Shown here one piece after another: positions 254 to 62,927 of a DNA stretch of 64,000 nt. A program made the translations under genes and the position numbers. Origin of the DNA: Isurus oxyrinchus. Taxonomy: Eukaryota. The stretch's first letter is position 1; the number at the start of each line of letters is the position of its first letter. The DNA lies in contig JANJGN010000926.1 in assembly GCA_026770705.1 (NCBI GenBank), positions 62,001 to 126,000 of the forward strand. The letters run 5' to 3'. Under the pieces are notes generated by a model. It worked only from the letters and a program-made list of their open reading frames with translations. It was not told where the DNA came from and ran no database searches.

Positions 254-393
254 ACAGTGGAGGAGAGATTCTGCACGTGATCCTGATCCTGGGAATACGA
301 GCTGTGATATTCCTTGTGGCTGTGGTTATCACTATCACTGGAGTCTGTGTCTGGGAGAGACAAACAGTGAAAGGAAGTCGACAGACTGTTTGA
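254..393 (+). CDS. Terminal TM/cytoplasmic exon of a putative activating-type Ig-superfamily receptor (rest of gene lies left of the window)
   Basis: Pyrimidine-rich acceptor (tttctttctgtgtgttctctag) at 251-253. Phase-1 reading gives xSGGEILHVILILGIRAVIFLVAVVITITGVCVWERQTVKGSRQTV*: a hydrophobic TM with an internal Arg and a ~12-aa tail with no Tyr. AATAAA at 777-782. Confidence 0.7.
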
Positions 394-1123
394 AGCTTTG
401 TACAGCAACAATCTGGTCAGTCAGTGCGGACAAATAACGTGTGATGTTGTGTTAAGTTGTAATGAAACTGGTCAGTGTCCTGGTTATAATCATCTCCGTA
501 TCATCGAGTCATTCCAGCAATGGAGGAGGACATTTGGCCCATTGAGTCTATGCTGTCTCTCTGTAAAGCAATCCACTCAGTCCCATCCCCTGCTCTATCC
601 CCGTATCCCTGCAAATTTATTTCCAATTTCCGTCCAATTTCCTTTTGAAATTGTTCATCGAATAGGAATGAACAGAAATGTGACGTTGCTAAACTCTGTT
701 CTCTGATTGGAATGTGCTTTCTGAATGCTGCACCTTTTTCACGCTGCGATAGATTGTAAGAAGCATTTGGCTTATGAATAAAATTACATTGATTAACTCA
801 AGTGATTAAAATGCTCAGCCTGTTCTGTAGATATTTAAAGATTAAAATTCTTGTTTTGCTGCAAAATACTTGGCTCAAAGACATAGCTTCCTGTTGTCAC
901 GTTTTCCAATCAGATGAATTCCTCTGTCCATCTTTATAATAGAAATTTCCAATGTAAACATGTCACATTGTAACTGCACACACTTGCCAGTGGCTGGTGT
1001 GATACCAAAGCTGTCTTGCTGCAGAGAAACAGCGAGAAATATTCCTGTTGTGTGCATGAACTTCATGTTAGCATGAGACACAGGCATCAGATGAAATTTT
1101 GTGCAATTTGTACAATGTTCTTT

Positions 1124-1445
1124 AGACAGTGCAGCACTCCCTCAGATCAGACCCTCCGACAATGCAGCACTCCCTCAGTTCAAACCCTCTGACAGTGCAG
1201 CACTCCCTCAGTTCAGAACCTCCGACAGTGCAGCACTCCCTCAGTTCAGACCCTCTGACAGTGCAGCACTCTCTCAGTTCAGACCCTGTGACAGTGCAGC
1301 ACTCCCTCAGTTCAGACCCTCCGACAGTGCAGCACTTTCTCAGTTCAGACCCTGTGACAGTGCAGCACTCCCTCAGTTCAGACCCTCCGACAGTGCAGCA
1401 CTCCCTCAGTTCAGACCCTCCGACAGTGCAGCTCTCCCTCAGTTC
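1124..1445. repeat. 30-bp minisatellite (gacagtgcagcactccctcagttcagaccctcc)
   Basis: About 10 directly visible tandem units; source of spurious repetitive ORFs. Confidence 0.95.
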
Positions 1446-1541
1446 TTCTCCGCCGATGCTGCCAGACCTGCTGAGTTTTTCCAGGTATTTCTGTTTCTGT
1501 TTCTGTTTTGAATTTCCAGCATCTGCAGTTTTTTTGCTTTT
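1444..1541 (+). mobile_element. Penelope-like terminal fragment
   Basis: ttcttctccgccgatgctgccagacctgctgagtttttccagg matches the end of the Penelope copy at ~44470-44533. Confidence 0.7.
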
Positions 1542-1544
1542 AGT

Positions 1545-2450
1545 GCTGGGCAGTTCCTCAGCAAGGATTCGGGCCACAAAACATTGCGAGTGCTGTGGGT
1601 CTGCGCCACGATTTAGAGAGCTGTGCTTGGCACGCCTATTCTAGTCCCAGTCCAGTGTGGTGGGGAGAGTCTGGCAGTCCTGGGTTGGTGGTGCCCAGCA
1701 TGGTGTGCAGGACGTGGTCAGTCGCTCACACACGTCCATCCTGGGGGTGGGTGGCTTGATACTAGGCCGCAGGTGGCACAATCCCAGTCAGGGGAGGCAT
1801 CTGCAGCCTGTCAGTGGGGAGCAGGTAATATAGAGAGTAGGGGTGGGGGTGGGAATCGAGGGGGGCCGGTGGTCTCTGTAAGTCACAGTACAATGGGCCT
1901 CTAGTTGGAGAGAGGTCAGGTCTACATGGGGCATTGGGATGTCAACATCAGACAGTCTAGGGAGGAGGACTGGGATGTCAACCCCGAACACAATAAGATC
2001 AAGGATTAGAGAGGAAGGGAGGAGACTGATTGGAAGGAGGGGAATGTGCACATTATGCTCCTCCAGCACGATGGGAGGGACTGTGATGGTTACGGGGGTG
2101 GGGGGGCGGGTGACGTGTGAGGGGATAGACGCTTACCTGGTGGTATTGCCTCAGCCCCACCCTTTTTCAAGCTGATCCAATGTCGCAGTTGAAGAATAAG
2201 CTACAAAACAAATTGGCAGGGGAGGTCTCCCAGGGCCTGTGGGAGACATCACCCACTGCACTCATAGGCCTGTTTGAAGGGGCACCCGAACAATTCCGGC
2301 TTTTCCAAATGATGAGGAAGACACAGCTGCACCCCGAGTCCCCTACTGGGGATCCAGACGGTTGCAATAGCTCTGCGAGGGACTCATGGGCTCCACAGTG
2401 ACTCCCTAATTAGCGACTGGAAGGTTTATGTTCATTTATCTTTATTATCC
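1545..2450 (-). mobile_element. Degenerate L1/Tx1-like retroelement 3' fragment (tentative)
   Basis: Minus-frame IIWKSRN resembles the C-terminal motif of L1/Tx1 ORF2; GC-rich and fragmented. Confidence 0.3.
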
Positions 2451-2559
2451 GTTCATATTGAGCAATGGAGCTCCTGATTTGTCACCTTTCTGTACCTCGT
2501 CCAATGCTTCTGTTATCAGGACTTCCACATCGATGTGAAAGAGCCATGATGATAGCAGA

Positions 2560-2680: not shown

Positions 2681-2789
2681 TTTAATTGATTGATACATTT
2701 TTTTCTTATTCATTTCAGGGATGTTGGTGTCACTGGCTAGGCCAGTATTTGTTGCCCATCCCCAATTGCCTTTGAGAACATATGGATAT

Positions 2790-7869: not shown

Positions 7870-7980
7870 CTAATATCTACAGCAGAGACCACAAGTCTCA
7901 TTTGATTCTCTCGAATTACAGCAGTTACAGCAGAATCTGCAGAATCTGCCCATTCTCTTCTGGCGCTGCAGCAAGGAGCC
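7870..7980 (-). CDS. HAMP: Hepcidin-like gene exon 3 (furin site and mature 8-Cys peptide)
   Basis: Acceptor ctcctgcttttccag, then GSLLQRQKR|MGRFCRFCCNCCNSRESNETCGLCCRY*. RxKR furin site and the C-CC-CC-C-CC hepcidin cysteine pattern. Confidence 0.92.
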   Translation of the reverse strand, partial: GSLLQRQKRMGRFCRFCCNCCNSRESNETCGLCCRY

Positions 7981-8064: not shown

Positions 8065-8446
8065 ATGGCGCATTTCTATAGCGCCTTTCCCCTCCTCAGG
8101 ATGGCCCAAAGTGTTCCACAGCTGAAGGAAGGACTTTTTCTGAAGTGGGCTCACCGCTGTAATGTAGGAAACGCAGCAGGCAATTCACGCACAGCAAGAT
8201 CCCACAAACAGAAATGTGATAATGGCCCCGATTTTCAGTTTTTTACCAATGTCAGTTGAGGGATAAATGTTTGCCCCAGGAAAGTGGACATAACTCCACC
8301 CATCCAGCCCGCACCACCCCCTCCACACATACCCCCCAACTCCTGACGCACTTCATCTAAATTGTGGCCATGGAATCCTCTATATCCACCTGAGAGGGCA
8401 GATTGGTTGCCCCAGTTTAATGTCTCATCTGAAAGACAGCGCCTTC
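8065..8446 (-). mobile_element. SINE (shark SacSINE/DeuSINE-like) running into the 30-bp array
   Basis: Homologous to 10470-10775 and, in reverse orientation, to 25200-25480. Confidence 0.55.
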
Positions 8447-8780
8447 AACAGTGCAGCACCCCCTCAGTACTGACCCTCCGACTGTGCAGCACTCCCTCAG
8501 TACTGACTCTGACAATGCAGCACATCCTCAGTACTGACCCTCCAACAGTGCAGCACTCCCTCAAGACTGACCCTCTGACAATGCAACACTCCCTCAGTAC
8601 TGACCCTCCGACTGTGCATCCCCCCGCCGGTACTGACCCTTCGACAATGCAACACTCCCTCAAGACTGACCCTCTGACAATGCAGCACTCCCTCAGTACT
8701 AACCCTCTGACAATGCAGCACTCCCTCAGTACTGACCCTCTGACAATGCAGCACACCCTCAATACTGACCCTCCGATAGC
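8447..8780. repeat. 30-bp minisatellite (cagtgcagcactccctcagtactgaccctccga)
   Basis: About 11 tandem units. Confidence 0.95.
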
Positions 8781-10469: not shown

Positions 10470-11220
10470 GACTTGCATTTCTCTAACGCCTTTCACCACA
10501 TCCCAAAGCATTTCACAGCCACTGAAGGATGTTTTTGAAGTGCACTCACACTGTAGGAAATGTGGCAGCTGATTTGTGCACAGCAAGATCCCACAAATAG
10601 CAATGTGATCATGGCCTAGATCATCTGTTTTTGGTGATGTTGGGTGAGGGATAAATATTGGTCCCAGGACACCGGGGAGAACACCCCCTGCTCTTCCTCC
10701 AAATAGTGGCTGTGGGATCTTTCACACCCGCCCGAGAGGGCAGACGTGGGACTCAGTTTAATGTCTCATTCAACATTGTTGTGCTCCCTCAGTACTAACC
10801 CTTTGACACTGCAGCACTCCCTCAGTACTAACCCTTCGATAGTGCTGCGCTCCCTCAGTACTGTCCCTCCGTCAGTGCAGCTCTATTTCAGTACTAACCC
10901 TTCGACACAGCAGCACTCGCTCAGTACTGACCTCCGACAGTATAGCACTCCCTCAGTACTGTCCCTCCAATAGTGCAACACTTCCACTCTACTTACCCTG
11001 TAACAATGCAGCACTTCCTCAGTACTGACCCTCCGTCAGTGCAGCGCTCCCTCAGTACTGACCCTCCGACAGTGCAACACTTCCACAGTACTGACCCTGT
11101 AACAATGCAGCACTTCCTCAGTACTGACCTCCGACAGTATAGCACTCACTCAGTACTGTCCCTCCAATAGTGCAACACTTCCACACTACTGACCCTCTGA
11201 CAGTGCAGCACTCCCTCAGC
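10470..11220. repeat. SINE plus 30-bp minisatellite array
   Basis: Same SINE-then-array arrangement as 8065-8780. Confidence 0.85.
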
Positions 11221-11296
11221 ACGGAGTGTTGACCGACGTTATGGGACTGAATTCCCTGGAGTGAGACTCAGACCAGAGATTTAGGTAGGGTTGTTC

Positions 11297-12730
11297 CGGC
11301 TGGAGGAGGTTACAGAGATAGGGAGGGTTGTAGAGGCTGGAGGAGATAACAGAGATAGGGAGGGTTCTAGACGCTGCAGGAGGTTACAGAGATAGGGAGG
11401 GTTGTAGGGGCTGTAGGAGGTTACAGAGATAGGGAGGTGAGTAGGGGCTGTAGGAGGTTAAAGAGATGGGGGGGTTGTGGGGGCTGGAGGAGGTTACAGA
11501 GGTAGGGAGGGTTGTAGAGGCTGGAGGAGGTTACCAAAATAGATACTGTTGTAGGGGCCACAGTAGGTTACAGAGATAGGGAGAGTTATAGTGTGGAGAG
11601 GACGTTATAGAGTTCATGAGCATTGTAGGGGCTGGAGGAGGTTACAGTGATTCTGAGGGTCGTGGGGCCTGGAGGAGGTTACAGAGATAGGGAGGGTTGT
11701 AGGGTCTGGAGGAGGTTACAGAGATAGGGAGGGTTGTAGGGTCTGGAGCAGGTTACAGAGATAGGGAGGGTTGTAGGGTCTAGAGGAGGTTACAGTGATC
11801 ATGAGGGTTGTGGGGCCTGGGGGAGGTTACAGAGATAGGTAGGGTTGTAGGTGCTGGAGGAGGTTACAGAGATAGGGAGGGTTGTAGGATCTGGAGGAGG
11901 TTACAGTGATCGTGAGGGTTGTGGGGCCTGGGGGAGGTTACAGAGATAGGGAGTGTTGTGGGGACTGTAGGAGGTTACATAGATAGGGAGGGTTGTCGGG
12001 TCTGGAGGAGGTTACAGAGATAGGGAGGGTTATAGGGACTGGAGGAGGTTACAGAGATAGGGAGGGTTGTAGAGACTGTAGGATGTTACAGAGATAGGGA
12101 TTGTTGTAGGGGCTGGAGGATGTTACAGAGATAGGGAGGGTTGTAGGGGCTGGAGGAGGTTACAGAGATAGGGAGGGTTGTAGGGGCTGGAGGAGGTTAC
12201 AGAGATAGGGAGGGTTGTACGGGCTGGAGGAGGTTACAGAGATAGGGAGGGTTGTAGGGGCTGGAGGAAGTTACAGAGATAGGGAGGGTTGTAGGGGCTG
12301 GAGGAGGTTACAGAGATAGGGAGGGGTGTAGGGGCTGGAGGAGGTTACAGAGATAGGGAGGGTTGTAAGGCCTGGTGGAGGTTACAGAGATAGGGAGGGT
12401 TGTAGGGGCTGGAGGAGTTTACAGAGATAGGGAGGGGTGTAGGGGCTGGAGGAGGTTACAGAGATAGGGAGGGTTGTAGGGCCTGGTGGAGGTTACAGAG
12501 ATAGCGAGGGTTGTAGGGGCTGGAGGAGTTTACAGAGATAGGGAGGGTTGTACGGGCTGGAGGAGGTTACAGAGATAGGGAGGGTTGTAGGGGCTGGAGG
12601 AGGTTACAGAGATAGCGAGGGTTGTAGGGGCTGGAGGAGTTTACAGAGATAGGGAGGGTTGTACGGGCTGGAGGAGGTTACAGAGATAGGGAGGGTTGTA
12701 CGGGCTGGAGGAGGTTACAGAGATAGGGAG
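11297..12730. repeat. 32-bp minisatellite (ggctggaggaggttacagagatagggagggttgtag), G-rich on +
   Basis: About 45 visible tandem units. Confidence 0.95.
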
Positions 12731-12932: not shown

Positions 12933-13024
12933 CTCGACAAGGAGAAGAAGTGACTCAGCTGCAGGGAGAGCAGCAAAGTCAGAGTGAACAAGACAAGTCG
13001 CCATTTCATCTGGGAGCTTCCCAT
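12933..13024 (-). CDS. HAMP: Hepcidin-like gene exon 1 (signal peptide); splice/phase defect as assembled
   Basis: (MGSSQ)MKWRLVLFTLTLLLSLQ... is signal-peptide-like. The GT donor at 12932 is in phase 2, incompatible with phase-0 exon 2. An in-phase CAG|CTGAGT at 12958 looks like a G>C-mutated donor. Confidence 0.6.
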
Positions 13025-13095
13025 CTCTGCCTGTCTCTTCTGATCTTCTGGCTCTGCTTTGATGCTTTGGTTTGTAACTAGAGGAGCTTCCTGCT

Positions 13096-13310
13096 CTTAT
13101 ACCTGAAACACTTGAAGGGGACAGCCGCGGGTGGGTAGCTGTGTGGTATCACACCCATTTCTGGATATTGCAGTGTCGATGTTCCCTGTCCCACTGGCCT
13201 GGGACCAGCAGTAAGGTCACTGGGACATTGAATGTCTGGCGCCGAGAACTATCAGTCCCTCCGCAACGCCCTTCACCTTGTGCAAATATGTGTTCATATT
13301 GATGCAACAC
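13096..13310 (-). promoter_or_regulatory. Putative HAMP promoter: TATA-like box, BMP-responsive GGCGCC with adjacent SMAD element, C/EBP-type sites
   Basis: TATAAG (minus) at 13096-13101; GTCTGGCGCC at 13234-13243; TTGTGCAA at 13278-13285; TGATGCAA at 13300-13307. Confidence 0.55.
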
Positions 13311-15384: not shown

Positions 15385-17250
15385 TCCCTATATCTGTAAC
15401 CTCCTCTCTCTCTCCCTTTCCTCCAGCCCCTACAACCCTCCCTTAGGCAGCCTCCACCTGCCTCTACAATCCTCCCCATCTCTGTAACCACCTTCAACCC
15501 CTACACCCCTCCCTATATCTGTAACCACCTCCAACCCCCACAACCCTCCCCATCTCTGTAACCACCTTCAACCCCTACACCCCTCCCTATACCTGTAACC
15601 TCCTCCAGCCCCTGTAACCCTCCCTATCTCTGTAACCTCCTCCAGCCCCTACACCACTCCCTATCTCTGTAACCTCCTCCAACCCCTACAACCCTCCCTA
15701 TCTCTGTAACCTCCTCCAACCCCTACAACCCTCACTATCTCTGTAACCTCCTCCAGCCCCTACAACCCTCACTATCTCTGTAACCTCCTCCAACCCCTAC
15801 AACCATCCCTATCTCATTAACCTCCTCCAACCCCTAAAACCCTCACTATCTCTGTAACCTCCTCCAACCCCTACAACCCTCACTATCTCTGTAACCTCCT
15901 CCAACCCCTACAACCATCCCTATCTCATTATCCTCCTCCAACCCCTACAACCATCCCTATCTCATTAACCTCCTCCAACCCCTACAACCCTCCCTATCTC
16001 TGTAACCTCCTCCAACCCCTACAACCCTCCCTATCTCTGTAACCTCCTCCAGCCCCTACAACAATCCCTATCTCTGTAACCTCCTCCAGCCCCTACAACC
16101 CTCCCTATCTCTGTAACCTCCTCCAGCCCCTACAACAATCCCTATCTCTGTAACATCCTACAGTCTCTACAACCCTCCCTATCTCTGTAACCTCCTCCAG
16201 TCCCTATAACCCTCCCTATCTCTGTAACCTCCTCCAGCCCCTACAACAATCCCTATCTCTGTAACCTCCTCCATCCTCTACAGTCCTCCCCATCTCTGTA
16301 ACCTCCTCCAACCCTTCCTATATATGTAACCTCCTCCACAAGCCCATACAATCCTCTCTATCTCTGTAACAACCTCCAGCCCCACAACACCCTTATACCT
16401 GTAACCTCCTAGCCACTGTAACACTCCCTATCTCTCAAGCCTCCACCAGCCTTGACAATGCTCCCCATCTCTGTAACTTCCTCCAACCCCCAGTACCCTC
16501 CCTATTTCTGTAATCTGTTCCAGTCCCTACAACCCTCCCTATCTCTACAACCTGCTCCACCCCCTGCAACTCGCCCTATCTCTGTGTCATCCTCCTGCCC
16601 CTACAACCCTCCCTATTTCTGTAACCTCCTCCAGCCCCTACAACCCTCCCTATCTCTGTGTCCTCCTCCAGCCCCTACAACCTTCCCTATCTCTGTAACC
16701 TCCTCCAGCCCCTACAACCTTCCCTATCTCTGTAACCTCCTCCAGCCCCTACAACCCTCCCTATCTCTGTAACCTCCTCCAGTCCCTACAATCCTCCCCA
16801 TCTCTGTAACCACCTTCAACCCCTACACCCCTCCCTATATCTGTAACCACCTCCAACCCCCACAACCCTTCCCATCTCTGTAACCACCTTCAACCCCTAC
16901 ACCCCTCCCTATCTCTGTAACCTCCTCCAACCCCTACAACCCTCCCTATCTCTGTAACCTCCTCCAACCCCTACAACCCTCACTATCTCTGTAACCTCCT
17001 CCAACCCCTACAACCCTCACTATCTCTGTAACCTCCTCCAACCCCTACAACCCTCACTATCTCTGTAACCTCCTCCAACCCCTACAACAATCCCTATCTC
17101 TGTAACCTCCTCCAGCCCCTACAACAGTCCCAATCTCTGTAACCTCCACCAGCCCCTACAACCCTCCCTATCTCTGTAACCTCCTCCAGCCCGTACAACC
17201 CTCCCTATCTCTGTAACCTCCTCCAGTCCCTACAACCCTCCCTATCTCTT
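15385..17250. repeat. 32-bp minisatellite, C-rich on + (inverted relative to 11297-12730)
   Basis: Tandem units of cctacaaccctccctatctctgtaacctcctccagcc. Confidence 0.95.
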
Positions 17251-17958: not shown

Positions 17959-17964
17959 TAAAAT

Positions 17965-19319: not shown

Positions 19320-19612
19320 GGTGTAATACACGTCACTGTCTTCAGCTCTGAGACTGTCAATCCTCACCGAACAATTCTTCCCTTCCAAGTCGCCGATTAT
19401 TTTAGCACGTCCCACGAATGTGGCCACCCCATAATTGGGATCTTTGGTGTATGTGATGGTATATTTCCATCTATACCAATATTTATACCAAGCTCCGTGC
19501 AGTGCTGTGTAAGAGTGGGAAGGAAAGTCAAAGCTACACGGAATAACCACACAAGAGCTGCTGATGGCCCTCCGAGGCAGCGCCTTCATAGACCATCCCT
19601 CTGACGTCACTC
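19320..19612 (-). pseudogene. Truncated divergent Siglec-like V-set exon
   Basis: Acceptor cctttcag, then GVTSEGWSMK...SSCVVIPCSFDFP...GAWYK...GRAKIIGDLEGKNCSVRIDSLRAEDSDVYY. Siglec V Cys pattern, cut just before the F-strand Arg by the Gypsy junction. Confidence 0.8.
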
Positions 19613-20115: not shown

Positions 20116-20334
20116 TCCTGTGAAGCAATAAGGATGTTTTACTGCATTAAATGGCACCTTTAAATGGCACCTTTCAGGGAATTAAACAGCCCCAGGGAAT
20201 TATCTAATGTCAAGACAAGGAAGGAGAGATTGAGAAGGGACATCGCAAACCGATTCACCAAACACGGCAAAAATTCATTGTTCCCTCACTCCCTGTGCTG
20301 GGTGTCCAGCTTTTTCTCTCAGTGAGTTTAGTCC

Positions 20335-23300
20335 TCACAATATCTATCTATCACACTCTTCTGCTCTATCTCTCTCTCTCACACACACACATTCTCTCTC
20401 TAACACTCACAATCTCTCTCTATCACACTCTTCTGCTCTATCTCTCTCTCTCACACACACACATTCTCTCTCTAACACTCACAATATCTATCTATCACAC
20501 TATTCTGCTCTCTCTCTCTCACACACACATTCTCTCTCTAACACTCACAATCTCTATCTATTGCACTCTTCTGCTCTATCTCTCTCTCTCACACACACAT
20601 TCTCTCTCTAACACTCACAATCTCTCTCTATCACACTCTTCTGCTCTATCTCTCTCTCACACACACATTCTCTCTCTAACACACAATCTCTATCACACTC
20701 TTCTGCTCTATCTCTCTCTCTCACACACACACATTCTCTCTCTAACACTCACAATCTCTCTCTATCACACTCTTCTGCTCTATCTCTCTCTCTCACACAC
20801 ACACATTCTCTCTCTAACACTCAATCTCTCTCGATCACACTCTTCTGCTCTATCTCTCTCTCTCACACACACACATTCTCTCTCTGACAAACACAATCTC
20901 TCTCTATCACACTCTTCTGCTCTATCTCTCTCTCTCACACACACACATTCTCTCTCTAACACTCACAATCTCTCTCTATCACACTCCTGTGCTCTATCTC
21001 TCTCTCTCTCTCTCACACACATTCTCTAACAATCACAATCTCTCTATCGCACTCTTCTGCTCTCTCTCTCTCTCTCTCACACACACACCTTCTCTCTCTA
21101 ACAAACACAATCTCTCTCTATCGCACTCTACTGCTCTCTCTCTCTCTCTCACAAACACAATCTCTCTCTAACATTCACAATCTCTCTCTATCGCACTCTT
21201 CTGCTCTATCTCTCTCTCTCACACACACACATTCTCTCTCTAACACTCACAATCTCTCTCTATCTCACTCTACTGCTCTCTCTCTCTGTCTCACAAACAC
21301 AATCTCTCTCTATCGCACTCTTCTGCTCTCTCTCTCTCTCACAAACACACATTCTCTCTCTAACAATCACAATCTCTCTCTATCACACTCCTGTGCTCTA
21401 TCTCTCTCTCTATCACACACACATTCTCTCTCTAACACTCACAATCTCTCTCTATCACACTCCTCTGCTCTATCTCTCTCTCTCTCACACACACACATTC
21501 TCTCTCTAACACTCACAATCTCTCTCTATCACACTCTTCTGCTCTATCTCTCTCACACACACACATTCTCTCTCTAACACTCACAATCTCTCTCTATCTC
21601 ACTCTACTGCTCTGTCTCTCTCTCTCACAAACACAATCTCTCTCTATCGCACTCTTCTGCTCTCTCTCTCTCACAAACACACATTCTCTCTCTAACAATC
21701 ACAATCTCTCTCTATCACACTCTTCTGCTCTATCTCTCTCACACACACACATTCTCTCTCTAACACTCACAATCTCTCTCTATCGCACTCTTCTGCTCTA
21801 TCTCTCTCTCACACACACACATTCTCTCTCTAACACTCACAATCTCTCTCTATCACACTCTTCTGCTCTATCTCTCTCTCACACACACACATTCTCTCTC
21901 TAACACTCACAATCTCTCTCTATCGCACTCTTCTGCTCTATCTCTCTCTCTCACAAACACACATTCTCTCTCTAACACTCACAATCTCTCTCTATCGCAC
22001 TCTTCTGCTCTATCTCTCTCTCACACACACACATTCTCTCTCTAACACTCACAATCTCTCTCTATCACACTCTTCTGCTCTATCTCTCTCTCTCTCACAC
22101 ACACACATTCTCTCTCTAACACTCACAATCTCTCTCTATCACACTCCTGTGCTCTATCTCTCTCTCTCTCTCTCACACACATTCTCTAACAATCACAATC
22201 TCTCTATCGCACTCTTCTGCTCTCTCTCTCTCTCTCTCACACACACACCTTCTCTCTCTAACAAACACAATCTCTCTCTATCGCACTCTACTGCTCTCTC
22301 TCTCTCTCTCACAAACACAATCTCTCTCTAACATTCACAATCTCTCTCTATCGCACTCTTCTGCTCTATCTCTCTCTCTCACACACACACATTCTCTCTC
22401 TAACACTCACAATCTCTCTCTATCTCACTCTACTGCTCTCTCTCTCTGTCTCACAAACACAATCTCTCTCTATCGCACTCTTCTGCTCTCTCTCTCTCTC
22501 ACAAACACACATTCTCTCTCTAACAATCACAATCTCTCTCTATCACACTCCTGTGCTCTATCTCTCTCTCTATCACACACACATTCTCTCTCTAACACTC
22601 ACAATCTCTCTCTATCACACTCCTCTGCTCTATCTCTCTCTCTCTCACACACACACATTCTCTCTCTAACACTCACAATCTCTCTCTATCACACTCTTCT
22701 GCTCTATCTCTCTCACACACACACATTCTCTCTCTAACACTCACAATCTCTCTCTATCTCACTCTACTGCTCTGTCTCTCTCTCTCACAAACACAATCTC
22801 TCTCTATCGCACTCTTCTGCTCTCTCTCTCTCACAAACACACATTCTCTCTCTAACAATCACAATCTCTCTCTATCACACTCTTCTGCTCTATCTCTCTC
22901 ACACACACACATTCTCTCTCTAACACTCACAATCTCTCTCTATCGCACTCTTCTGCTCTATCTCTCTCTCACACACACACATTCTCTCTCTAACACTCAC
23001 AATCTCTCTCTATCACACTCTTCTGCTCTATCTCTCTCTCACACACACACATTCTCTCTCTAACACTCACAATCTCTCTCTATCGCACTCTTCTGCTCTA
23101 TCTCTCTCTCTCACAAACACACATTCTCTCTCTAACACTCACAATCTCTCTCTATCGCACTCTTCTGCTCTATCTCTCTCTCACACACACACATTCTCTC
23201 TCTAACACTCACAATCTCTCTCTATCACACTCTTCTGCTCTATCTCTCTCTCTCTCACACACACACATTCTCTCTCTAACACTCACAATCTCTCTCTATC

Positions 23301-24625
23301 GCACTCTTCTGCTCTATCTCTCTCTCTCACACACACATTCTCTCTCTAACACTCACAATCTCTCTCTATCACACTCTTCTGCTCTATCTCTCTCTCTATC
23401 ACACACATTCTCTCTCTAAACCTCACAGTCTCTCTCTATCACACTCTTCTGCTCTATCTCTCTCTCTCTCACACACACACACACATTCTCTCTCTAACAC
23501 TCACAATCTCTATCACACTCTTCTGCTCTATCTCTCTCTCTCTCACACACACACATTCTCTCTCTAACACTCACAATCTCTCTCTATCACACTCTTCTGC
23601 TCTATCTCTCTCTCTCTCACACACACACATTCTCTCTCTAACACTCACAATCTCTCTCTATCGCACTCTTCTGCTCTATCTCTCTCTCTCTCACACACAC
23701 ACATTCTCTGTCTAACACTCACAATCTCTCTCTATCACACTCCTGTGCTCTATCTCTCTCTCTATCACACACACATTCTCTCTCTAACACTCACAATCTC
23801 TCTCTATCACACTCCTCTGCTCTATCACTCACACACACACACACATTCTCTCTCTAACACTCACAATCTCTATCACACTCTTCTGCTCTATCTCTCTCTC
23901 TCACACACACACATTCTCTCTCTAACACTCACAATCTCTCTCTATCACACTCTTCTGCTCTATCTCTTTCTCTCTCTCGCACACATTCTCTCTCTAACAC
24001 TCACAATCTCTATCACACTCTTCTGCTCTATCTCTCTCTCTCTCTCACACGCACACATTCTCTCTCTAACATTCACAATCTCTCTCTATCGCACTCTTCT
24101 GCTCTATCTCTCTCTCTCACACACACACATTCTCTCTCTAACACTCACAATCTCTCTCTATCACACTCTTCTGCTCTCTCTCTCTCTCTCACACACACAT
24201 TCTCTCTGTCTCCCTCCCTCAAATACATTCTCTCTCTCTCTCAGACACAAACACTCTCTCACACACTCACACACTTTCCTTAAAACTAACACAATCTCTC
24301 TTTCTGTCAAGCACACACTCTCTCTTTTACACACACACTCTCTCGCTCAGACACACACATTCTCTCTCTCTCAAACATTTAACATTTCTCTTCATCTCGA
24401 TCTTCTGCTGTCTCTCTCTTTCTCTCCCTCGCACACACACACACTCTCTGTCACAAACACACTCTCTCTCCCATACACTCTCTCTCACACACTCTCACAT
24501 GCACACTCTCTCCCTCATATACAAACACTCTCCCTCACACATGCACAGACTCTCTCTATCTCTTTTTCTCTCTCACACAGTCTCTCTGTCTCTCTCTGTC
24601 TCTCAGACACTCTCTCTCTCTCTGA
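20335..24625. repeat. Large CT/CA compound minisatellite (~60-bp unit) with a 1160-bp higher-order duplication
   Basis: Unit tctctctatcacactcttctgctctatctctctctcacacacacattctctctctaacactcacaa; identical ORFs at 20989 and 22149. Confidence 0.95.
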
Positions 24626-51300: not shown

Positions 51301-52032
51301 AAGAATCACTTCATTGGCTGTGAATCAGTTTAGGATCGTCCTGAGGTGGTAAAAGGCGCTATGGAAATGTGAGACTTACTTTTGTATTTTGAAAGCAGGT
51401 TTTCAAGGATGAGATGGGAACTGAGAGGTAACAACAATCAGCAGCAACTTTCCTATTTTCAAACTTGGTGGGGAATGTGTCACTGAGCTGAATACACTTT
51501 CACTCCCAGACCCTTGAATTGCCAACACCGGGGTGTGGGTGATGGAGCAGTCCACAGCTCATGGAACCCTGGCTCATCATTCTCTCAGAGATCTGGGTCA
51601 CTGATCCCATTGCTCTCTGTGGGAGCTTCCTGTGTACAAACTCACTGCCACGTTAGACAGTGACTATACTTCAAGAATTTCTTCATTGTCTGTGAAGTGA
51701 TTTGGTACATGCTGAGGTGATGAAAGACGCTATAGGAATGCAAGTCTTTACTTTGTCGATTTGTCAGACTTTTAAACAGGATTAGAGAGACTGATGGGAG
51801 TGGATAACCTGATAGCATTGATGGACACAGTCAATACATTTAATCATTGATATTAAAGTGATTATTAGAGGTTGCTTTAAGACTGAACTGGAAGCAATCA
51901 CCAGGTTATTGAGAATCAGACAGTGTGTAAAAATAAGCTGTGTTTTGTGTTAATATGTAAACGTCACAGTTTGTGTTATTTCCCATTGAGTGTTGAATGT
52001 GAATTGTTGAGTAATTATAACACAGCACTTAC

Positions 52033-52401
52033 CAGAAATGTGAAGCTGGGTTTCAGGGTAATAGTTATGGCTCGGACCATTGTCAAATTCTATTCTGAAA
52101 TAATAAGGTCCTGCATCTTCCCGTCTGATGTTGTTTATAATCAGGGAACAGTCGCCATCTTTCAGGTCTCCAGACAGCCGGGTCCGATGGCGGAACCGTG
52201 GTAACTCGTGACTGTGATCCTTGGAGTGAAAGGCAATGGGAGCCCAGGGAATCTGTTTCTCATTATTAAACCAGACTCCACCTCGCGGTTGGTTTTCCAA
52301 ATGTGATGGATAACTGTAATGACATGGAATCTGTACACACGAGCTTTCATGAGCTGTCACCTCTCGTGGAGTGTCACCTTTCCACTCTTGTGACAGTCCA
52401 A
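52033..52401 (-). CDS. Siglec-like A V-set exon 1 (essential Arg present)
   Basis: 369 nt, phase 1-1: VGLSQEWKGDTP...SSCVQIPC...GDCSL...DAGPYYFRIEF. Confidence 0.92.
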
Positions 52402-53281
52402 CTGGGGAGAGAAATATCAATATTTAACTCTGGATGTTTTTTCGATCCACTAGACTTGATATGTACTCCCTCCATCACTAGGGCACAGTGGCTGCAGTGT
52501 GGACCATTTACAGGACACACAAGGAAATCCCCAAGGTTTCACAATGGATGGAAGAGAATCCTGGACACAGGAGTGGACTAGTTGATTCTACATTGGCTCA
52601 TGGTCCTCAGGACCCTGTTTAGTTTTTTCAAATTACTCATTCATATCATTTATTACCCATCCCATGTCTATCAGAGGTATTTAAGATTCAACCACATTGC
52701 TGTGGGTTTGGAGTGACATGTCCTCCAGACTGGGTAAGGGTGGCAGATTTCCTTCCCTATAGGTGATCAGTGAACCAGGCTTTTTAATCCCATTCATCTG
52801 CCGTGATGGGATTCACATCCAGGGCCCCAGAGCATCACCCTGGGCCTCTGGAATACTAGCCCAGTGACAATACCTCTCTGCTACCGCTTCCCCTTAGTGA
52901 AGCCAGTCTTCCACCCAACACAGTGTCTACAAGACCCACCAATTGAGATCCATTCAGTGCTGATTTACAAGACAGGACAATGGATTAGGAGCCCTCAGAA
53001 CTCCCCCCATTATCACCGTCATGAATCACTAATTAGCCTAACATTCCTGTCTGCTCTTCAACACAGCTGATTGGCTAATCTGATTCAATCTGATTGGTGT
53101 TCATTCCCTCTTCAATGTTTAAGGAATCACCAATCACTCGGCCTCTAGTTATTCTCCTGCCCACAAGAGGGAACATTCTCTCTCTACCCAGTCAATCAAA
53201 ACCTTTCATCTAATCCTAGTGGTGCTTGAGTATATAGTCGGGAATCCAGGGCAATGGAGCCTCAGGAGAAGAGATGGAAAC

Positions 53282-55989: not shown

Positions 55990-56029
55990 CTTGGAGAAGT
56001 GACAGGAGGAAGTATGATTTACCGATCAT
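55990..56029 (-). CDS. Siglec-like A signal-peptide exon (coding part; exon 55990-56071)
   Basis: Acceptor ctctttcag; MIGKSYFLLSLLQ+G|gtaata. Phase-1 join to V1 gives MIGKSYFLLSLLQVGLS-QEW. Confidence 0.85.
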
Positions 56030-56462
56030 TGTCCACTCCCAGATATTTCCTCAGCTTATAACTCTGAAGTTCTGAAAGAGAAAGGAGTTAATGAGACTTC
56101 ACCTCTTGTCCGAATGCTCTCGAGAGATCAGAACTGCTTTTAGACAATATCTTCACAGACTAATTTGATTCTTTGTGGGATGATAGGTGCTCTGCAGAGA
56201 GGTACAAGTCTTTCAGAAAGAAAAACAATGAAGGACTTGCATTTCTATAGCACCTTTCACCACCTCAGGATGTCCCCAAGCTCATGTCCCTTGAGCTAGA
56301 AAGATGTTCTGTACAACAGACTTGAGCCTCACACCCAGATCTCAATAATCAGTAGAAATCTTTCAAAGGCATCAATCATTGGAATCTGTCTTTATAAAGT
56401 CACAACATCAACAAAGGACGGTGTTGGTGGTGGAAGTGAATTCCAATCGTTCCGTTACTTAC

Positions 56463-56550
56463 CCAGGACCTGTCCGACTGCTCGCCTGGGGAGGAACTGC
56501 CCACACGCTCTGCTTGGGCTGAATGACCTCTTCCTGTGCTGCTCCCTCTG
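56463..56550 (-). other. Candidate non-coding first exon of Siglec-like A
   Basis: Strong donor TGG|GTAAGT at 56462; GC-richer segment with an ETS-like caggaag motif. Confidence 0.4.
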
Positions 56551-57259
56551 TGTATTTAATTAGAAAGAGCTGATGTATCTCTGTGAGACAAAATGAGGAA
56601 GTTGGAACAAAGTGACAGAACAGCACTTTGCTGTGCACTGTCAGTAAACCCTGTGTCTGTATAAGGATATAAGAACATTACAAGTAGGATGTGTTTTTTC
56701 TTGAACTTACTAATGAAATTGGTGCAATGAAAGGGGCTTTTATTGTTCGAAGAGCTGGAGTTCAGAAGACCGAGTGATACAATGGAAAATTTACTTTCAA
56801 AGGGAAAGCTAGCTATATAAAGGAAGGAGCTTGTGTGTGTGAGGCAGGAGCATTTCAGACCTAACCAGCCTGTAGCCTCCAACCAACTAGCAAAGGAACC
56901 TCATTCAGAACTCGTATTGTCAAATGTGCTTTGCCTGGTGTCTATATTATGTCAATGGTTCATTGTTGCCTTAGTAGAGATTTACGTCGGGGTGATTAAT
57001 TGGGGATTTGTTAAAAATTTATTATAGTAGTTATTTGTAGCCAATGTGTATGTGTTAAATTTGTTGTTAAATTAATAAATGGTTTATTTAGTTTTATATA
57101 AAAAAACTCAAAAGCCTCGGTCGTCTTATTCCTGCTGAATTCAAAGTCTTCATCTTGAAATTACAATCAGCAAAATAGGGTTATGACAGTTGTTTCAATT
57201 TTCCCTCTGGGATTTGAACAACTCAGCCTTTACCCTTGGCTGTGTCCTAGTCCCTAATA

Positions 57260-61283: not shown

Positions 61284-61532
61284 TCAGTTTCGCTTGAATC
61301 TGATCTGTGCTGAATCTGTCTCCTCTTCCCTGTGGACAGACCCATCACCACTGGGCACCCTGAAGACTTGGGGATTGGCATAGAGAAAGTCCGCGGGATT
61401 GTCAGGGTTCCCATGTCCAACATCGCCTCCCACTGGACCTTCAGAGAGACCCCGGGGAGCTGGGGTCTCCCCCTCGCTAGTTGTGTCTCTGGTTGTGTTC
61501 CGGGGCTCAGTAATCAGCACGTTCTGTTTACC
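61284..61532 (-). CDS. Paralogous Siglec-like terminal cytoplasmic exon B with degraded Tyr motifs
   Basis: 249 nt, intact frame: ...ADFLYANPQVF...EETDSAQIRFKRN* versus LFYANI and TEYAQI in gene A. Confidence 0.75.
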   Translation of the reverse strand, partial: GKQNVLITEPRNTTRDTTSEGETPAPRGLSEGPVGGDVGHGNPDNPADFLYANPQVFRVPSGDGSVHREEETDSAQIRFKRN

Positions 61533-61953
61533 CTACAGAGAAATGGAAACAGAAGACATCCTCACATCATTTACTGGCACTGATAGGGTTAAATTATTGT
61601 GCAGCGTCGTTAGTGTCAGTCGTGGCTCAGTGGGTTTAACCCTCTCTCATGTCATCTGAAAGAAACCACCTATGGCAGTGCAGTGCTCCCTCAGTACTGA
61701 CCCTCTGATAGTGCAGCACTTCCTCAATGCTGACCCTCCGACAGTGAAGCACTCTCTCAGTACTGACCCTCCGACAGTGCGGCACTCCCTCAGTACTGAC
61801 CCTCTGTCAGTCTCGCACTCAATCGGTAATGGCTCTGGTGAGTGACGGCTTGGATTCTGCACTCAGGTGCCTGGTGTGAGGCTCAATAACATGAATCTTG
61901 TAATCAGAGAGAGGATGAGAGAGAGGGATAGAGATGAAGGGACAGAGACAGAG

Positions 61954-62710
61954 TGTTATGAATCTTTTAATGTATGTAATGTAATTGGAAATGGTCTATT
62001 TAAAAAGAGGTTTAGTCTGTGGGTGTGTTTGTGTGTGTTTCAATTGGATTAAAGCCAGCCAGTCTGGGTACTTTGATGTATAGTAGTTTTGAGATGTAAA
62101 CAATGAGGTAAAGTGGTAATTTGCATTTTTAAATAGAGCATTCAATGTCTGGGGGTGAAATCTTAAACCAATCAACATTTATATTAAGAATAAAATTGAG
62201 ACAATGAAAGGGGATTTATTGTTAGAAGAGGTGGAGTTCAAAGGTCCTGATGATACAATGAGAATTTACATTCAAATAGAAGTGCTGGGTATAACTTGAG
62301 CAGTTTTGTGTGTGCAGAGCAGAGGCTTGTAACATCAAAGCAGCTGTAAGCCTTCACCTGTCTGCAAAGGAACCAAAGTGAAAGGAACCTCATTTGGAAT
62401 TTGTGAGGTGAAAATGCTTTGCTGGAATCTGCTTAAATTCTATGGGTTATCTTAGAGGAGATTAGTTTGGGAATTTGTTAAAAAGTTATGATAATACTAG
62501 TTTGTAGCCAAGCGCATATGTTTAACTAGTGCAAATTAATAAATGCTTCATGTAGTATGATATAAAACCATCCCGAGAACTGGTGGTCTTATTCCTGAAT
62601 TTAGAGCTGCATCTCAAACATTCCACTGGGAAATATAGGTTATGACAGTTGTTTAAAGTTTCCCTCTGGGATTTTAAACAACAGCCTTTACCAGTTGCTG
62701 TGTCATAACA
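61954..62710. mobile_element. Solo-LTR-like insertion
   Basis: TGTTATGA...TCATAACA termini; absent from the paralogous intron of gene A; related sequence at ~56600-57250. Confidence 0.65.
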
Positions 62711-62845
62711 GAGAGACAGCATGATACTGAACCATTGCTGACTCCACAGGTACAAATCAGTGGGTAACTGGGCTGGGAATCTGGGACACGTGTTGTCTAC
62801 ACACTGAGGTTGAAGCTTTGGAGTGAGTGTAAACAGCTCCTGTAC

Positions 62846-62927
62846 CTGGTGCTTCACAGAGAGTGGACTGGGGGTCAATGCAATGTCACTGGTCCCTGAA
62901 ACTCTCTCCTCCATCGCTGTCTTTCTC
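62846..62927 (-). CDS. Paralogous juxtamembrane cytoplasmic exon B
   Basis: 82 nt, RKTAMEERVSGTSDIALTPSPLSVKHQ, splice sites intact. Confidence 0.75.

What the first reader, a model, noticed from the sequence alone, without database searches (positions are those of the whole stretch)
254..62927. Candidate paired inhibitory/activating Siglec-like receptor cluster next to hepcidin in a shark-like genome
Seen: an ITIM+ITSM Siglec-like gene, a paralogous tail with both Tyr motifs degraded, an Arg-in-TM short-tail exon, a third broken V exon, and a hepcidin gene. Established: mammalian HAMP lies beside MAG (Siglec-4) and CD22, and paired Siglecs such as Siglec-5/14 use a charged TM residue to recruit DAP12. 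Inference: this is the chondrichthyan HAMP-MAG/CD22 region with a lineage-specific expansion that may have produced paired receptors independently of mammalian CD33-related Siglecs.
Basis: partly seen in the sequence, partly recalled or inferred. Interest (0 to 1): 0.8.

Follow-up and report, generated by a model that had tools for sequence, protein, structure and literature searches.

The report
Shark Siglec cluster around hepcidin
This stretch of a shark genome holds a hepcidin gene surrounded by sialic-acid-receptor (Siglec) genes, including one complete inhibitory gene and the last exon of an activating-type relative, a pairing so far described mainly in mammals.

Summary
Gene A (minus strand, 56029 to 35053) is complete. 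It has a signal exon, two V-set exons that both keep the essential Arg, a C2 exon and seven near-identical Ig exons. The true TM exon lies at 37715-37811, followed by a small cytoplasmic exon and an ITIM+ITSM tail.

Exon 254-393 (+) encodes an Arg-bearing TM and a short tail. The same module ends 9 predicted Siglec proteins from three shark orders. In great white shark models it follows heads up to 118/120 identical to gene A's V domain, so a paired activating partner is plausible.

Tail B belongs to a second conserved tail type. Only its distal Tyr loss is copy-specific. The third V exon is a truncated orphan of an Arg-less subfamily. Hepcidin exons 1 and 3 are present.

Not shown:
- expression
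- the link between exon 254-393 and its ectodomain, which lies off the window
- the signalling adaptor
- MAG/CD22/USF2 synteny

The flagged gaps lie at least 3.5 kb from any exon. The scan noted hepcidin-in-Siglec clusters on eight other pieces of this genome. The family is annotated automatically in other sharks, but my searches found no paper describing it.

The parts
254..393 (+). Terminal exon of an activating-type family member. It has a phase-1 acceptor, a TM segment with Arg (codon 298-300), a 14-16-residue tail and a stop at 391-393. The ectodomain exons lie before the window start.
   Evidence: 93.5% identical to the C-terminus of Carcharodon models P0181/P0183; same module in 9 proteins
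7870..7980 (-). Hepcidin exon 3: RQKR cleavage site, mature peptide with eight Cys, an 8-residue loop carrying an N-E-T sequon, and the stop codon
12933..13024 (-). Candidate hepcidin exon 1: ATG, signal peptide, donor AG|GTTAAG; TATAAG at 13094-13102
   Evidence: assignment to hepcidin is inferred from position and strand
19323..19612 (-). V3: the 5' part of a V-set exon of an Arg-less Siglec subfamily, cut off after ...DSDVYY; orphan relic
35053..35301 (-). Gene A last exon, tail type 1: ITIM LFYANI 35140-35157, ITSM TEYAQI 35071-35088, internal donor-like ATCAG|GT 35064-35076, stop
36755..36836 (-). Gene A cytoplasmic exon (82 bases, phase 2 to phase 0)
37715..37811 (-). Gene A transmembrane exon, with no charged residue in the TM segment
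   Evidence: 97% identical to the TM of P0168/P0179
38590..38739 (-). Ig8: relic holding the 3' half of an Ig exon, with no acceptor
39217..48720 (-). Array of seven 282-base phase 1-1 Ig exons: Ig7 39217-39498, Ig6 40307-40588, Ig5 41367-41648, Ig4 45118-45399, Ig3 46433-46713, Ig2 47430-47711, Ig1 48439-48720. Six of them are 266-274/282 identical pairwise. Ig3 has a 1-base deletion near 46587-46600.
49331..49627 (-). Gene A C2-set exon (first constant domain)
49999..50367 (-). Gene A V-set exon V-b, with essential Arg codon at 50060-50062 (YFFRIE)
52033..52401 (-). Gene A V-set exon V-a, with Arg codon at 52094-52096 (YYFRIE). The duplicated block 51833-52451 is 95% identical to 49799-50417 (the block holding V-b).
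55990..56029 (-). Gene A exon 1, from ATG: signal peptide, donor CAAG|GTAATA
61284..61532 (-). Cassette B tail exon, tail type 2: FLYANP 61371-61388, TDSAQI 61302-61319, TAG acceptor, open frame, stop. The internal donor seen in tail A is lost here (ATCAGAT).
62846..62927 (-). Cassette B cytoplasmic exon. The surrounding block is 92.6% identical to A's. No TM exon for it lies in the window.

Best explanation
The window is a piece of a multigene Siglec cluster of an elasmobranch, most like lamniform sharks, with a hepcidin gene embedded in it.

Gene A (minus strand, 56029 to 35053) encodes a signal peptide, two tandem sialic-acid-type V-set domains, one C2 domain and up to seven near-identical Ig domains. 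These are followed by an uncharged TM segment and a tail with an ITIM (LFYANI) and an ITSM (TEYAQI). I infer that it is an inhibitory receptor. Ligand binding would lead to tyrosine phosphorylation and recruitment of SH2 phosphatases.

Exon 254-393 (plus strand) is the last exon of a neighbouring family member. It supplies a TM segment with an embedded Arg and a short tail without motifs. This module is conserved across three shark orders. In predicted proteins of other sharks it is joined to V-V-C2 heads nearly identical to those of ITIM-tailed genes. I infer that it is the activating partner of a paired system. The Arg would pair with an acidic residue of an ITAM adaptor of the DAP12 or FcR-gamma type.

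In a tree of 66 V domains, 8 of them from Arg-TM proteins, those 8 lie scattered among the ITIM-type domains. The TM module itself is conserved. So the heads appear to be exchanged or homogenised between the two signalling types, as in primate Siglec-5/14.

Cassette B (cytoplasmic exon plus type-2 tail) is a tandem extra 3' cassette behind a gene that lies beyond the window end. It has lost the distal Tyr.

V3 is a truncated orphan exon.

Shown: the exons, motifs, homologies and identities. Inferred: signalling, adaptor use, expression, and which exons are joined in this genome.
For: Exon table with canonical splice sites and matching phases.

Siglec identity of the V domains, with the Arg retained.

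TM, cytoplasmic and tail exons were mapped with the Cetorhinus protein P0003 and others.

The tail aligns with the C-terminal ITIM/ITIM-like pair of a mammalian CD33 (13/39 identical, E 6e-4 for the single comparison).

The Arg-TM module occurs in 9 of 262 fetched proteins. A later scan of the proteins held found 10 with a charged TM residue and a short tail: these 9 plus one from outside the shark clade. The 9 are named Siglec-12, -13, -14, CD33-like and pIgR-like, from Carcharodon, Scyliorhinus canicula, S. torazame and Chiloscyllium. These genera belong to three orders.

V-b is 118/120 and 115/120 identical to the activating-type models P0183 and P0181. The best ITIM-type model reaches 112/120. 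The C2 exon is 92-96/98 identical to both kinds.

In the tree of the last V domain (66 rows), the activating label needs 7 changes for 8 rows. Starred branches join activating and ITIM-type proteins of the same genus, for example P0165/P0006 with P0167/P0001 at 100/100.

Precedent: Siglec-5/14 and Siglec-11/16 share their first two domains through gene conversion (PMC4042635, passages read). Homogenisation restricted to the ligand-binding domains of opposing receptor pairs has also been described (PMC3210942, passages read).
Against: The ectodomain that feeds exon 254-393 is outside the window, so the pair in this genome is not demonstrated. The link rests on automated gene models of other species, some of which clearly contain read-through errors.

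The 118/120 match is to a protein from another assembly, and possibly another species.

A donor-like GT at about 367 could let the Arg-TM exon continue into further exons, although 5 of the 9 homologous models end at the same ...KGSRQTV.

No adaptor gene was examined. The search for DAP12 in sharks listed 10 papers, none of them, by title and abstract start, on a shark adaptor.

Ig3 carries a frameshift as assembled. The array is full of gaps, so gene A may be defective or mis-assembled there.

Pfam found nothing for the tails or for the Arg-TM exon.
Confidence: 0.68

Rival explanations
1. The region is the orthologue of the mammalian USF2-HAMP-MAG-CD22 block, and the family arose there from a MAG/CD22-type ancestor by lineage-specific expansion.
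For: Hepcidin is flanked by Siglec exons.

For the full-length relative P0168, the best PDB match is MAG (152 bits) ahead of CD33 (92 bits).

In the quick tree the elasmobranch clade groups with shark proteins named MAG-like or Schwann-cell-myelin-protein-like, with SH-aLRT 93, not starred.

In Pristis and Heptranchias, proteins named CD22-like or MAG-like and family members are listed with the same longest-contig length (10,237,845 and 15,743,313). This suggests one scaffold for each. That is an inference from equal lengths only.

In teleosts, hamp-usf2 lies beside ffar2 (PMC10029227, passages). A reference title in that paper places the human FFAR cluster close to CD22.
Against: No USF2, LSR, MAG, CD22 or FFAR was detected in the window.

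For the V domain alone, CD33-related Siglecs score slightly above MAG (60.9 against 55.2 bits), and CD22 is far below (25 bits).

Gene A's architecture and tail are unlike those of MAG or CD22.

The 'MAG-like' shark protein P0144 matches mouse MAG with only 177 bits over about 480 residues, so a true MAG anchor is missing from my trees.

The human gene order is recalled, not tested here.
Confidence: 0.35
2. The family is the cartilaginous-fish counterpart of the CD33-related Siglecs. On this view the ITIM plus ITIM-like/ITSM tail, and perhaps the pairing, go back to the jawed-vertebrate ancestor rather than arising independently.
For: The tail has the same two motifs, in the same order and at the very C-terminus, as Tupaia CD33.

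The best single-domain PDB matches are Siglec-5, -8, -7 and CD33.

RefSeq's automatic names for relatives are mostly CD33-related ones.

Two V-set domains also occur in proteins named Siglec-12.
Against: The clade holding the four named mammalian CD33-related proteins is starred (99) and excludes every shark sequence.

The tail similarity is short (13/39) and could be convergence on SH2-binding motifs.

The locus is next to hepcidin. By recall, that is not where the mammalian CD33-related cluster lies.
Confidence: 0.3
3. The Arg-TM forms are not activating receptors. They would be decoys, poorly expressed by-products, or artefacts of automated gene prediction in a tandem array.
For: Every link between the Arg-TM exon and an ectodomain comes from predicted models. 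Several models in this family contain intron read-through or fused neighbours. No adaptor, transcript or protein evidence was available.
Against: The module is conserved nearly residue for residue across three orders, including the Arg and the tail. That argues for selection on a coding exon.

It has a strong phase-1 acceptor that fits every Ig-type exon of the family.

Nine independent models in five assemblies use it as the last coding exon.
Confidence: 0.15
4. Cassette B is a dead relic of a tandem duplication and is never used, rather than an alternative or additional 3' cassette of the upstream gene.
For: The distal Tyr is lost (TDSAQI), whereas 4 of the 6 type-2 tails picked up read TEYAQI (P0191 reads TEFTQI and P0168 AEYAQI).

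The acceptor is TAG, where tail A has CAG.

The internal donor present in tail A is lost.

No TM exon lies upstream of it within the window.
Against: Both exons keep open frames and usable splice sites.

pN/pS against tail A is about 0.55-0.6 in both halves, not 1.

The predicted proteins P0179 and P0184 join two such cassettes in frame, so tandem cassettes can be read together.
Confidence: 0.5

Closest known systems
Primate paired Siglecs: Siglec-5/Siglec-14 and Siglec-11/Siglec-16
   Same: One partner has ITIM-type motifs. The other has a charged TM residue and a short tail. The first domains are kept nearly identical, while the TM and tail differ (PMC4042635, passages; PMC5701461, listing and abstract start only). 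Here V-b is 96-98% identical to activating-type models, and the TM and tail are unrelated.
   Different: The shark heads have two V-set domains. The Arg-TM module is old: it is shared by three shark orders. In V-domain trees it is spread over many branches. Adaptor use is untested. The locus is beside hepcidin. The partner's ectodomain is not in the window.
Mammalian CD33-related Siglecs (CD33, Siglec-12)
   Same: V-set domain with the essential Arg, followed by C2 domains and a C-terminal ITIM plus ITIM-like/ITSM pair. Proteins named Siglec-12 also show two V-set hits.
   Different: The V domains fall outside the mammalian clade. Gene A has a stalk of seven repeated Ig exons, and the family has a second tail type (YANPQV).
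MAG (Siglec-4) and CD22, the neighbours of HAMP in mammals (gene order recalled)
   Same: A Siglec gene lies next to hepcidin. MAG is the best full-length PDB match of the relative P0168.
   Different: The domain count, the tandem V domains and the tail motifs differ. CD22 is a weak match. No orthology test was possible.
RefSeq-predicted elasmobranch 'Siglec' proteins (for example Carcharodon P0183 and P0168, Cetorhinus P0003 and P0186)
   Same: They belong to the same family, exon for exon. V-b is 98% identical to P0183, the Ig exon 98% to P0197-P0199, V3 91% to P0186 and tail A 82% to P0003.
   Different: These are automatic predictions with borrowed mammalian names. None is identical to the window. 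My five literature searches found no paper describing them.
Fish hepcidin (bass hepcidin, PDB 1S6W)
   Same: All eight Cys align, and the CRFCCNCC start is identical. A furin-type RQKR site is present.
   Different: The loop is three residues longer and carries an N-glycosylation sequon. Pfam scores 26.9 bits, just under the cut-off of 27. Exon 2 was not located.

Membership tests
[quoted passage not shown] | N-terminal V-set Ig domain with the conserved F-strand Arg | tested here: met
   Pfam V-set at 5e-13 and 3e-10. The best 18 PDB matches are all Siglecs, and YFFR aligns with the Siglec-5 motif. The Arg codons are at 50060-50062 and 52094-52096. V3 and its intact relative P0186 lack the Arg.
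[quoted passage not shown] | Siglec cysteine pattern in the V domain (C-x4-C early, third Cys in ...DCSL...), followed by C2-set domains | tested here: met
   SCVQIPC and DCSLII align with Siglec-5. The next exon hits C2-set_2 at 1e-7, and the later exons hit Ig_3/I-set. That this pattern defines the family is recalled.
[quoted passage not shown] | Binds sialylated glycans | not testable with these tools
   Needs a recombinant V-domain Fc fusion tested on glycan arrays, with an Arg-to-Ala control.
CD33-related Siglecs | Membrane-proximal ITIM plus distal ITIM-like/ITSM at the C-terminus | tested here: met
   LFYANI and TEYAQI are present. They align with the C-terminal end of Tupaia CD33.
CD33-related Siglecs | V domain groups within the CD33-related clade | tested here: not met
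   In the quick tree of 271 V domains, the clade with the four named mammalian proteins (99, starred) holds no shark row. Caveats: short alignment (129 columns), most rows unnamed, and no mammalian MAG, Siglec-1 or Siglec-15 in the tree.
MAG / CD22 orthologue | MAG or CD22 domain architecture and tail (V plus 4 C2 without ITIM, or V plus 6 C2 with several Tyr motifs; recalled) | tested here: not met
   Gene A has two V, one C2 and seven Ig exons, with an ITIM/ITSM tail.
MAG / CD22 orthologue | Conserved neighbours USF2, LSR and FFAR around HAMP | tested here: inconclusive
   Only hepcidin is in the window. Ten further ORFs gave no Pfam hit, and tblastn of all fetched proteins hit only family exons.
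Paired inhibitory/activating receptors (Siglec-5/14 type) | One member with ITIM-type motifs | tested here: met
   Gene A.
Paired inhibitory/activating receptors (Siglec-5/14 type) | A partner with a basic residue inside the TM segment and a short tail without motifs, attached to a Siglec ectodomain | tested here: inconclusive
   The exon is present. Its attachment to V-V-C2 heads is seen only in nine predicted proteins of other assemblies. The ectodomain in this genome is off the window.
Paired inhibitory/activating receptors (Siglec-5/14 type) | Near-identical ligand-binding domains in the two partners | tested here: inconclusive
   Gene A's V-b against activating-type P0183 is 118/120, and the C2 exon is 92/98. 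Activating and ITIM-type proteins of one genus cluster together. This is a comparison across assemblies, not between two genes of this genome.
Paired inhibitory/activating receptors (Siglec-5/14 type) | Association of the charged TM with an ITAM adaptor, and co-expression of both partners | not testable with these tools
The search listed no paper that, by title and abstract start, deals with a shark adaptor.
Hepcidin | Eight-Cys mature peptide after a furin site, encoded by the last exon of a small secreted precursor | tested here: met
   A signal-peptide exon lies 5 kb upstream on the same strand. The middle exon was not found.

The most novel reading that the evidence does not exclude
Galeomorph sharks have an ancient paired Siglec system. 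On this reading a single conserved Arg-TM/short-tail module, more than 100 million years old by the spread over three orders (the age is recalled), is repeatedly recombined with, or homogenised against, tandem-V heads of ITIM/ITSM-tailed neighbours. The CD33-type ITIM+ITSM tail already sits in the hepcidin neighbourhood. That would place the origin of the CD33-type signalling tail, and of Siglec pairing, at or before the base of jawed vertebrates, in the HAMP-MAG-CD22 region. It would agree with the proposal that all Siglecs share one ancestral region (Cao et al. 2009; title seen in a reference list only).
Probability: 0.3. Interest if true: 0.7.

Novelty: new member of a known kind. Interest (0 to 1): 0.5.

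Why it matters
Paired Siglecs such as Siglec-5/14 are usually discussed as a recent primate or mammalian answer to pathogens that mimic host sialic acids. If sharks have a conserved activating module attached to heads that track those of inhibitory neighbours, the same solution exists in the oldest living jawed vertebrates. The history of Siglec signalling tails then becomes testable, because the locus sits beside a stable landmark gene, hepcidin.

In practice, the corrected gene model gives a template for annotating the many similar clusters in this genome and in other shark genomes. It covers the true TM exon, the two tail types, the tandem tail cassettes and the symmetric Ig exons. In those genomes, automatic models currently carry borrowed mammalian names and contain read-through errors.

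Tried and rejected
(1) I first read the hydrophobic-looking frame at 36.9 kb and 62.9 kb as a TM exon with premature stops in both copies, which would have made both pseudogenes. tblastn with P0003 then found the real TM exon at 37715-37811 and showed that only the last 82 bases there are an exon.

(2) Tail B as a decayed copy of tail A: rejected in part, because the YANPQV...FKRN form recurs in six predicted proteins.

(3) V3 as the broken V exon of MAG. This was suggested by the FDFP...HG-WY look, which I recalled. PDB scores put sialoadhesin, MAG and Siglec-5 within one order of magnitude. The 91% match is to a Cetorhinus 'Siglec-13' with the family's own TM and tail. Rejected.

(4) I took the ORFs next to V3 (17.7-19.4 kb) for a gag/protease retroelement by eye. 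Pfam found nothing, so this stays an impression.

(5) Hepcidin relatives. The word-index search found none and the Atlas gave no usable hit. Of 30 candidate middle exons, the three phase-compatible ones of 20 residues or more were sent to Pfam and none gave a hit.

(6) The search with the Arg-TM end of P0006 found only 2 proteins. The word index is too coarse for a 48-residue piece.

(7) Small extra tblastn hits at 3-284, 37554-37628, 39833-48123 and 56424-56565 turned out to match read-through parts of gene models, with stops in the window. They are not exons.

(8) Literature. Five searches for shark, elasmobranch or fish Siglecs, one for hepcidin in cartilaginous fish, two for adaptors and one for HAMP/MAG/CD22 synteny gave no description of this family. 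Cao et al. 2009 is not held. Supplementary files were not consulted; those of the whale shark genome paper (PMC8455134) may list Siglec families.

(9) A phylogeny against mammalian MAG, CD22, Siglec-1 and Siglec-15 could not be built. Those sequences did not reach the best 150, and PDB sequences cannot be fetched as proteins.

Full report
WHAT THE WINDOW IS. The 64-kb window is vertebrate DNA rich in minisatellites and retroelement fragments, with 12 runs of N. Protein relatives of its Ig exons are all from sharks, rays and skates. The search of 1.84 billion representatives with one V exon gave 1407 proteins at E<=0.001 and 33 at E<=1e-30. [quoted passage not shown] The search with the closest full-length relative, P0003 from Cetorhinus maximus, gave 114 proteins at E<=1e-20, and every listed name is an elasmobranch. 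The highest identities to the window are 118/120 for the V domain of a Carcharodon carcharias protein and 90/92 for an Ig exon of Cetorhinus proteins. No protein is identical. The source is therefore a lamniform-like shark, and I cannot name the species.

GAPS FIRST. The six N runs flagged in the finding (25935-31511) lie in a stretch where no exon of any kind was found. The nearest exons are 3542 and 6322 bases away, and tblastn with all fetched proteins hit nothing between 19.7 and 33 kb. These runs sit inside a roughly 1.4-kb unit present three times. No reading frame crosses them, so 'in frame' does not apply. Continuity and true distances cannot be judged. Five more runs lie in the Ig-exon array, four of them starting 7-18 bases after the GT donors of Ig1 to Ig4. 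They are intronic, but they make the number of Ig exons a lower bound. One run lies 188 bases past the stop of tail B.

GENE A. On the minus strand I could place 14 exons with canonical AG/GT borders and matching phases.
- Exon 1, from the ATG at 56029 (signal peptide).
- V-a, 52033-52401.
- V-b, 49999-50367.
- A C2-set exon, 49331-49627.
- Seven Ig exons of 282 bases between 48720 and 39217.
- A TM exon, 37715-37811.
- An 82-base cytoplasmic exon, 36755-36836.
- The last exon, 35053-35301.

Both V exons hit Pfam V-set and Ig_CD22, and the next exon hits C2-set_2. Of 74 PDB sequences matched by V-b, the first 18 are all Siglecs. Siglec-5 scores 1.2e-15, MAG 6.5e-14, sialoadhesin 2.5e-12 and Siglec-15 1.5e-9, while CD22 scores only about 1e-4. 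The window's YFFR aligns with the Arg motif of Siglec-5. V-a and V-b are a recent duplicate: 619 bases are 95% identical including intron flanks, with pS 0.063 and pN 0.038.

The six clean Ig exons are 266-274/282 identical to each other. All are phase 1-1, so any number can be spliced in. Ig3 has a 1-base deletion (281 bases) that would shift the frame if the exon is used. Next to the gaps, an assembly error is possible. An eighth copy is only a 3' half. The tail carries LFYANI, which fits the ITIM pattern, and TEYAQI, which fits the ITSM pattern (the consensus patterns are recalled). Relatives with two to four V domains and with repeated Ig domains exist as predicted proteins, so this architecture is not peculiar to this assembly.

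A CORRECTION ABOUT THE TM. The hydrophobic-looking frame at about 36.9 kb, and its copy at about 62.9 kb, contains stop codons and is intron. The true TM exon was found only by mapping the Cetorhinus protein.

THE ARG-TM EXON. Exon 254-393 on the plus strand has a strong phase-1 acceptor. It encodes a TM segment with Arg (codon 298-300) about one third of the way in from the outer side, then 14-16 residues and a stop. Pfam has nothing for it.

The same module ends 9 of the 262 proteins held: three from Carcharodon, three from Scyliorhinus torazame, two from S. canicula and one from Chiloscyllium punctatum (names). A generic scan of the proteins held for a charged TM residue with a short tail found these 9 plus one protein from outside the shark clade. 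The genera belong to Lamniformes, Carcharhiniformes and Orectolobiformes. In the Carcharodon models P0181 and P0183 the module follows V-V-C2 directly, and it is 93.5% identical to the window exon. The exon's ectodomain must lie before the window start. An earlier first-stage note speaks of three V exons there (unchecked).

IS IT A PAIR? Gene A's V-b is 118/120 and 115/120 identical to the activating-type models P0183 and P0181, and at most 112/120 to any ITIM-type model among the 21 proteins compared. The C2 exon is 92-96/98 identical to both kinds. I built a careful tree of the V domain next to the C2 domain, with 66 rows: 8 activating-type, 12 type-1 tails including the two window exons, 2 type-2 tails, and 44 whose tail my patterns did not classify. 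In it the activating label needs 7 changes for 8 rows. Shuffled labels did as well in 137 of 500 trials, so the label is not clustered. Starred branches join activating-type and ITIM-type proteins of one genus.

The TM module itself is conserved across all nine. This is the pattern described for Siglec-5/14 and Siglec-11/16, where gene conversion covers only the first two domains (PMC4042635, passages), and for other opposing receptor pairs (PMC3210942, passages). The weak points are these:
- All links between head and TM come from automated models.
- Some models in this family are visibly wrong.
- The comparison is across assemblies.
- No transcript, adaptor or binding data exist here.
- A GT at about 367 could in principle act as a donor.

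TAIL B. The cassette at 62846-62927 plus 61284-61532 repeats gene A's cytoplasmic and last exons (92.6% and 87% at DNA level). The tail frame is open, and the tail peptides are 59/81 identical. The first 47 codons are almost the same (pS 0.096, pN 0.053). The last 35 differ strongly (pS 0.47, pN 0.28).

Aligning with relatives shows two conserved tail types in lamniform models. Type 1 reads ...YANINFSKLP...TEYAQIRFQKN, as in tail A. Type 2 reads ...YANPQVFRVP...TEYAQIRFKRN, as in tail B, and it occurs in six predicted proteins. So the altered first motif of tail B is a family trait. It keeps Tyr followed by x-Asn, a Grb2-type pattern by recall. Only the distal TDSAQI is peculiar to this copy.

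Two predicted proteins (P0179, P0184) read two cassettes in a row. They use a donor inside the tail exon (ATCAG|GT), in the same phase as the TM exon's donor. That site is present in tail A and lost in tail B. No TM exon for cassette B lies in the window. Earlier notes say that another terminal exon lies just beyond the window end (unchecked). I therefore read cassette B as an extra tandem cassette of the upstream gene, and whether it is used remains open.

V3. The exon at 19323-19612 has a good acceptor and 97 codons of a V domain, then runs into unrelated sequence after ...DSDVYY. Its Pfam V-set score is below the cut-off (23.6 against 26). Its PDB matches are Siglecs: sialoadhesin at 1.3e-10, then MAG and Siglec-5 at about 2e-9. 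It is 91% identical to the start of Cetorhinus P0186, a V-C2-Ig-TM protein with the family's type-1 tail. That protein's F strand reads ...VYYFYVD, with no Arg. No further exon of that gene type is in the window. V3 is a truncated orphan of an Arg-less subfamily.

HEPCIDIN. Exon 3 (7870-7980, minus strand) follows a CAG acceptor and encodes RQKR, then a 27-residue peptide with eight Cys. Pfam Hepcidin gives E 6e-6 and 26.9 bits against a cut-off of 27. The best PDB match is bass hepcidin, with every Cys aligned and three extra loop residues in the window's peptide. A signal-peptide exon with a TATAAG upstream lies at 12933-13024. I could not identify the middle exon. The gene lies tail to tail with the plus-strand Siglec gene, 7.5 kb from it, and 6.3 kb from V3, so it is inside the cluster. 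Earlier first-stage notes report the same arrangement on eight other pieces of this genome (unchecked).

ORTHOLOGY. A quick tree of 271 V domains from the best 150 representatives puts the window's V exons in a starred clade of 26 galeomorph shark rows, inside a 54-row elasmobranch group. That group sits beside shark proteins named MAG-like, with support 93, not starred. It lies outside the starred clade holding the four named mammalian CD33-related proteins, and outside the group with shark CD22-like proteins.

The tail, in contrast, resembles the C-terminus of a mammalian CD33. For the full-length relative P0168, MAG is the best PDB match. No USF2, LSR, MAG, CD22 or FFAR is visible in the window. 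Teleost hamp-usf2-ffar2 linkage is in print (PMC10029227, passages). The human HAMP-MAG-CD22 order is my recollection. Whether this is 'the' MAG/CD22 region, or a counterpart of the CD33-related cluster, stays open.

Expression, splice joints, the flanking windows and synteny in other sharks were therefore not tested.

VERDICT. This is an ordinary-looking but undescribed member of the Siglec paired-receptor kind, already present as automatic predictions in related shark genomes.

Noticed in passing
window 46587-46600 (Ig3, minus strand): Ig3 is 281 bases long instead of 282. One base is missing relative to the other six copies, which would shift the frame. The exon lies between two assembly gaps, so this may be an assembly error.
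   Followed up: partly
window 35064-35076 and 61295-61307: Tail A holds a donor-like ATCAG|GT just before its last codons, in the same phase as the TM exon's donor. The predicted proteins P0179 and P0184 of other sharks use such a site to read a second cytoplasmic-plus-tail cassette. In tail B the GT is lost.
   Followed up: partly
window 19323-19612 and protein P0186: The V3-type subfamily (Cetorhinus 'Siglec-13' models) has Tyr where Siglecs have the essential Arg. It may therefore be a Siglec-like receptor that does not bind sialic acid.
   Followed up: partly
window 7873-7953: The mature hepcidin peptide has an 8-residue loop with an N-E-T glycosylation sequon. Its N-terminus lacks the His-containing start that I recall for iron-regulatory hepcidins. 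It resembles the CRFCC type of fish hepcidin.
   Followed up: partly
window 1125-1446, 8442-8776, 10784-11219, 26825-27113, 35481-36544, 48851-49215: One 33-base minisatellite family occurs six times on both strands, giving long false ORFs. Two copies lie inside gene A: one between the cytoplasmic and tail exons, the other between the C2 exon and Ig1. One or two lie in the hepcidin gene.
   Followed up: no
window 11274-12730 and 15419-17249: A 37-base minisatellite of about 1.5-1.8 kb is present twice in inverted orientation. One copy lies inside the hepcidin gene region and one upstream of it.
   Followed up: no
window 20334-24623: A 4.3-kb satellite with a period of about 70 bases and strong C-over-G skew lies between V3 and gene A.
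   Followed up: no
window 42222-44533: An inverted duplication (97% identical arms of about 0.97 kb) sits in the intron between Ig4 and Ig5. Its ORF has a weak GIY-YIG hit (E 7e-4, below the cut-off). By recall this looks like a Penelope-type element.
   Followed up: partly
window 27586-31135: A unit of about 1.4 kb is repeated three times (87-97% identical). Each of the first two junctions carries two N runs at the same relative place. This may be an assembly artefact.
   Followed up: no
window 3-284 (+): Sequence just upstream of the Arg-TM exon matches, at 54% with stops, a read-through part of the S. torazame model P0165. This points either to a conserved intron segment or to a shared repeat.
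   Followed up: partly
window 17.7-19.4 kb (-): The ORFs that follow the break in V3 look to me like gag and protease of an LTR retroelement. Pfam found nothing, so the cause of the truncation is not established.
   Followed up: partly
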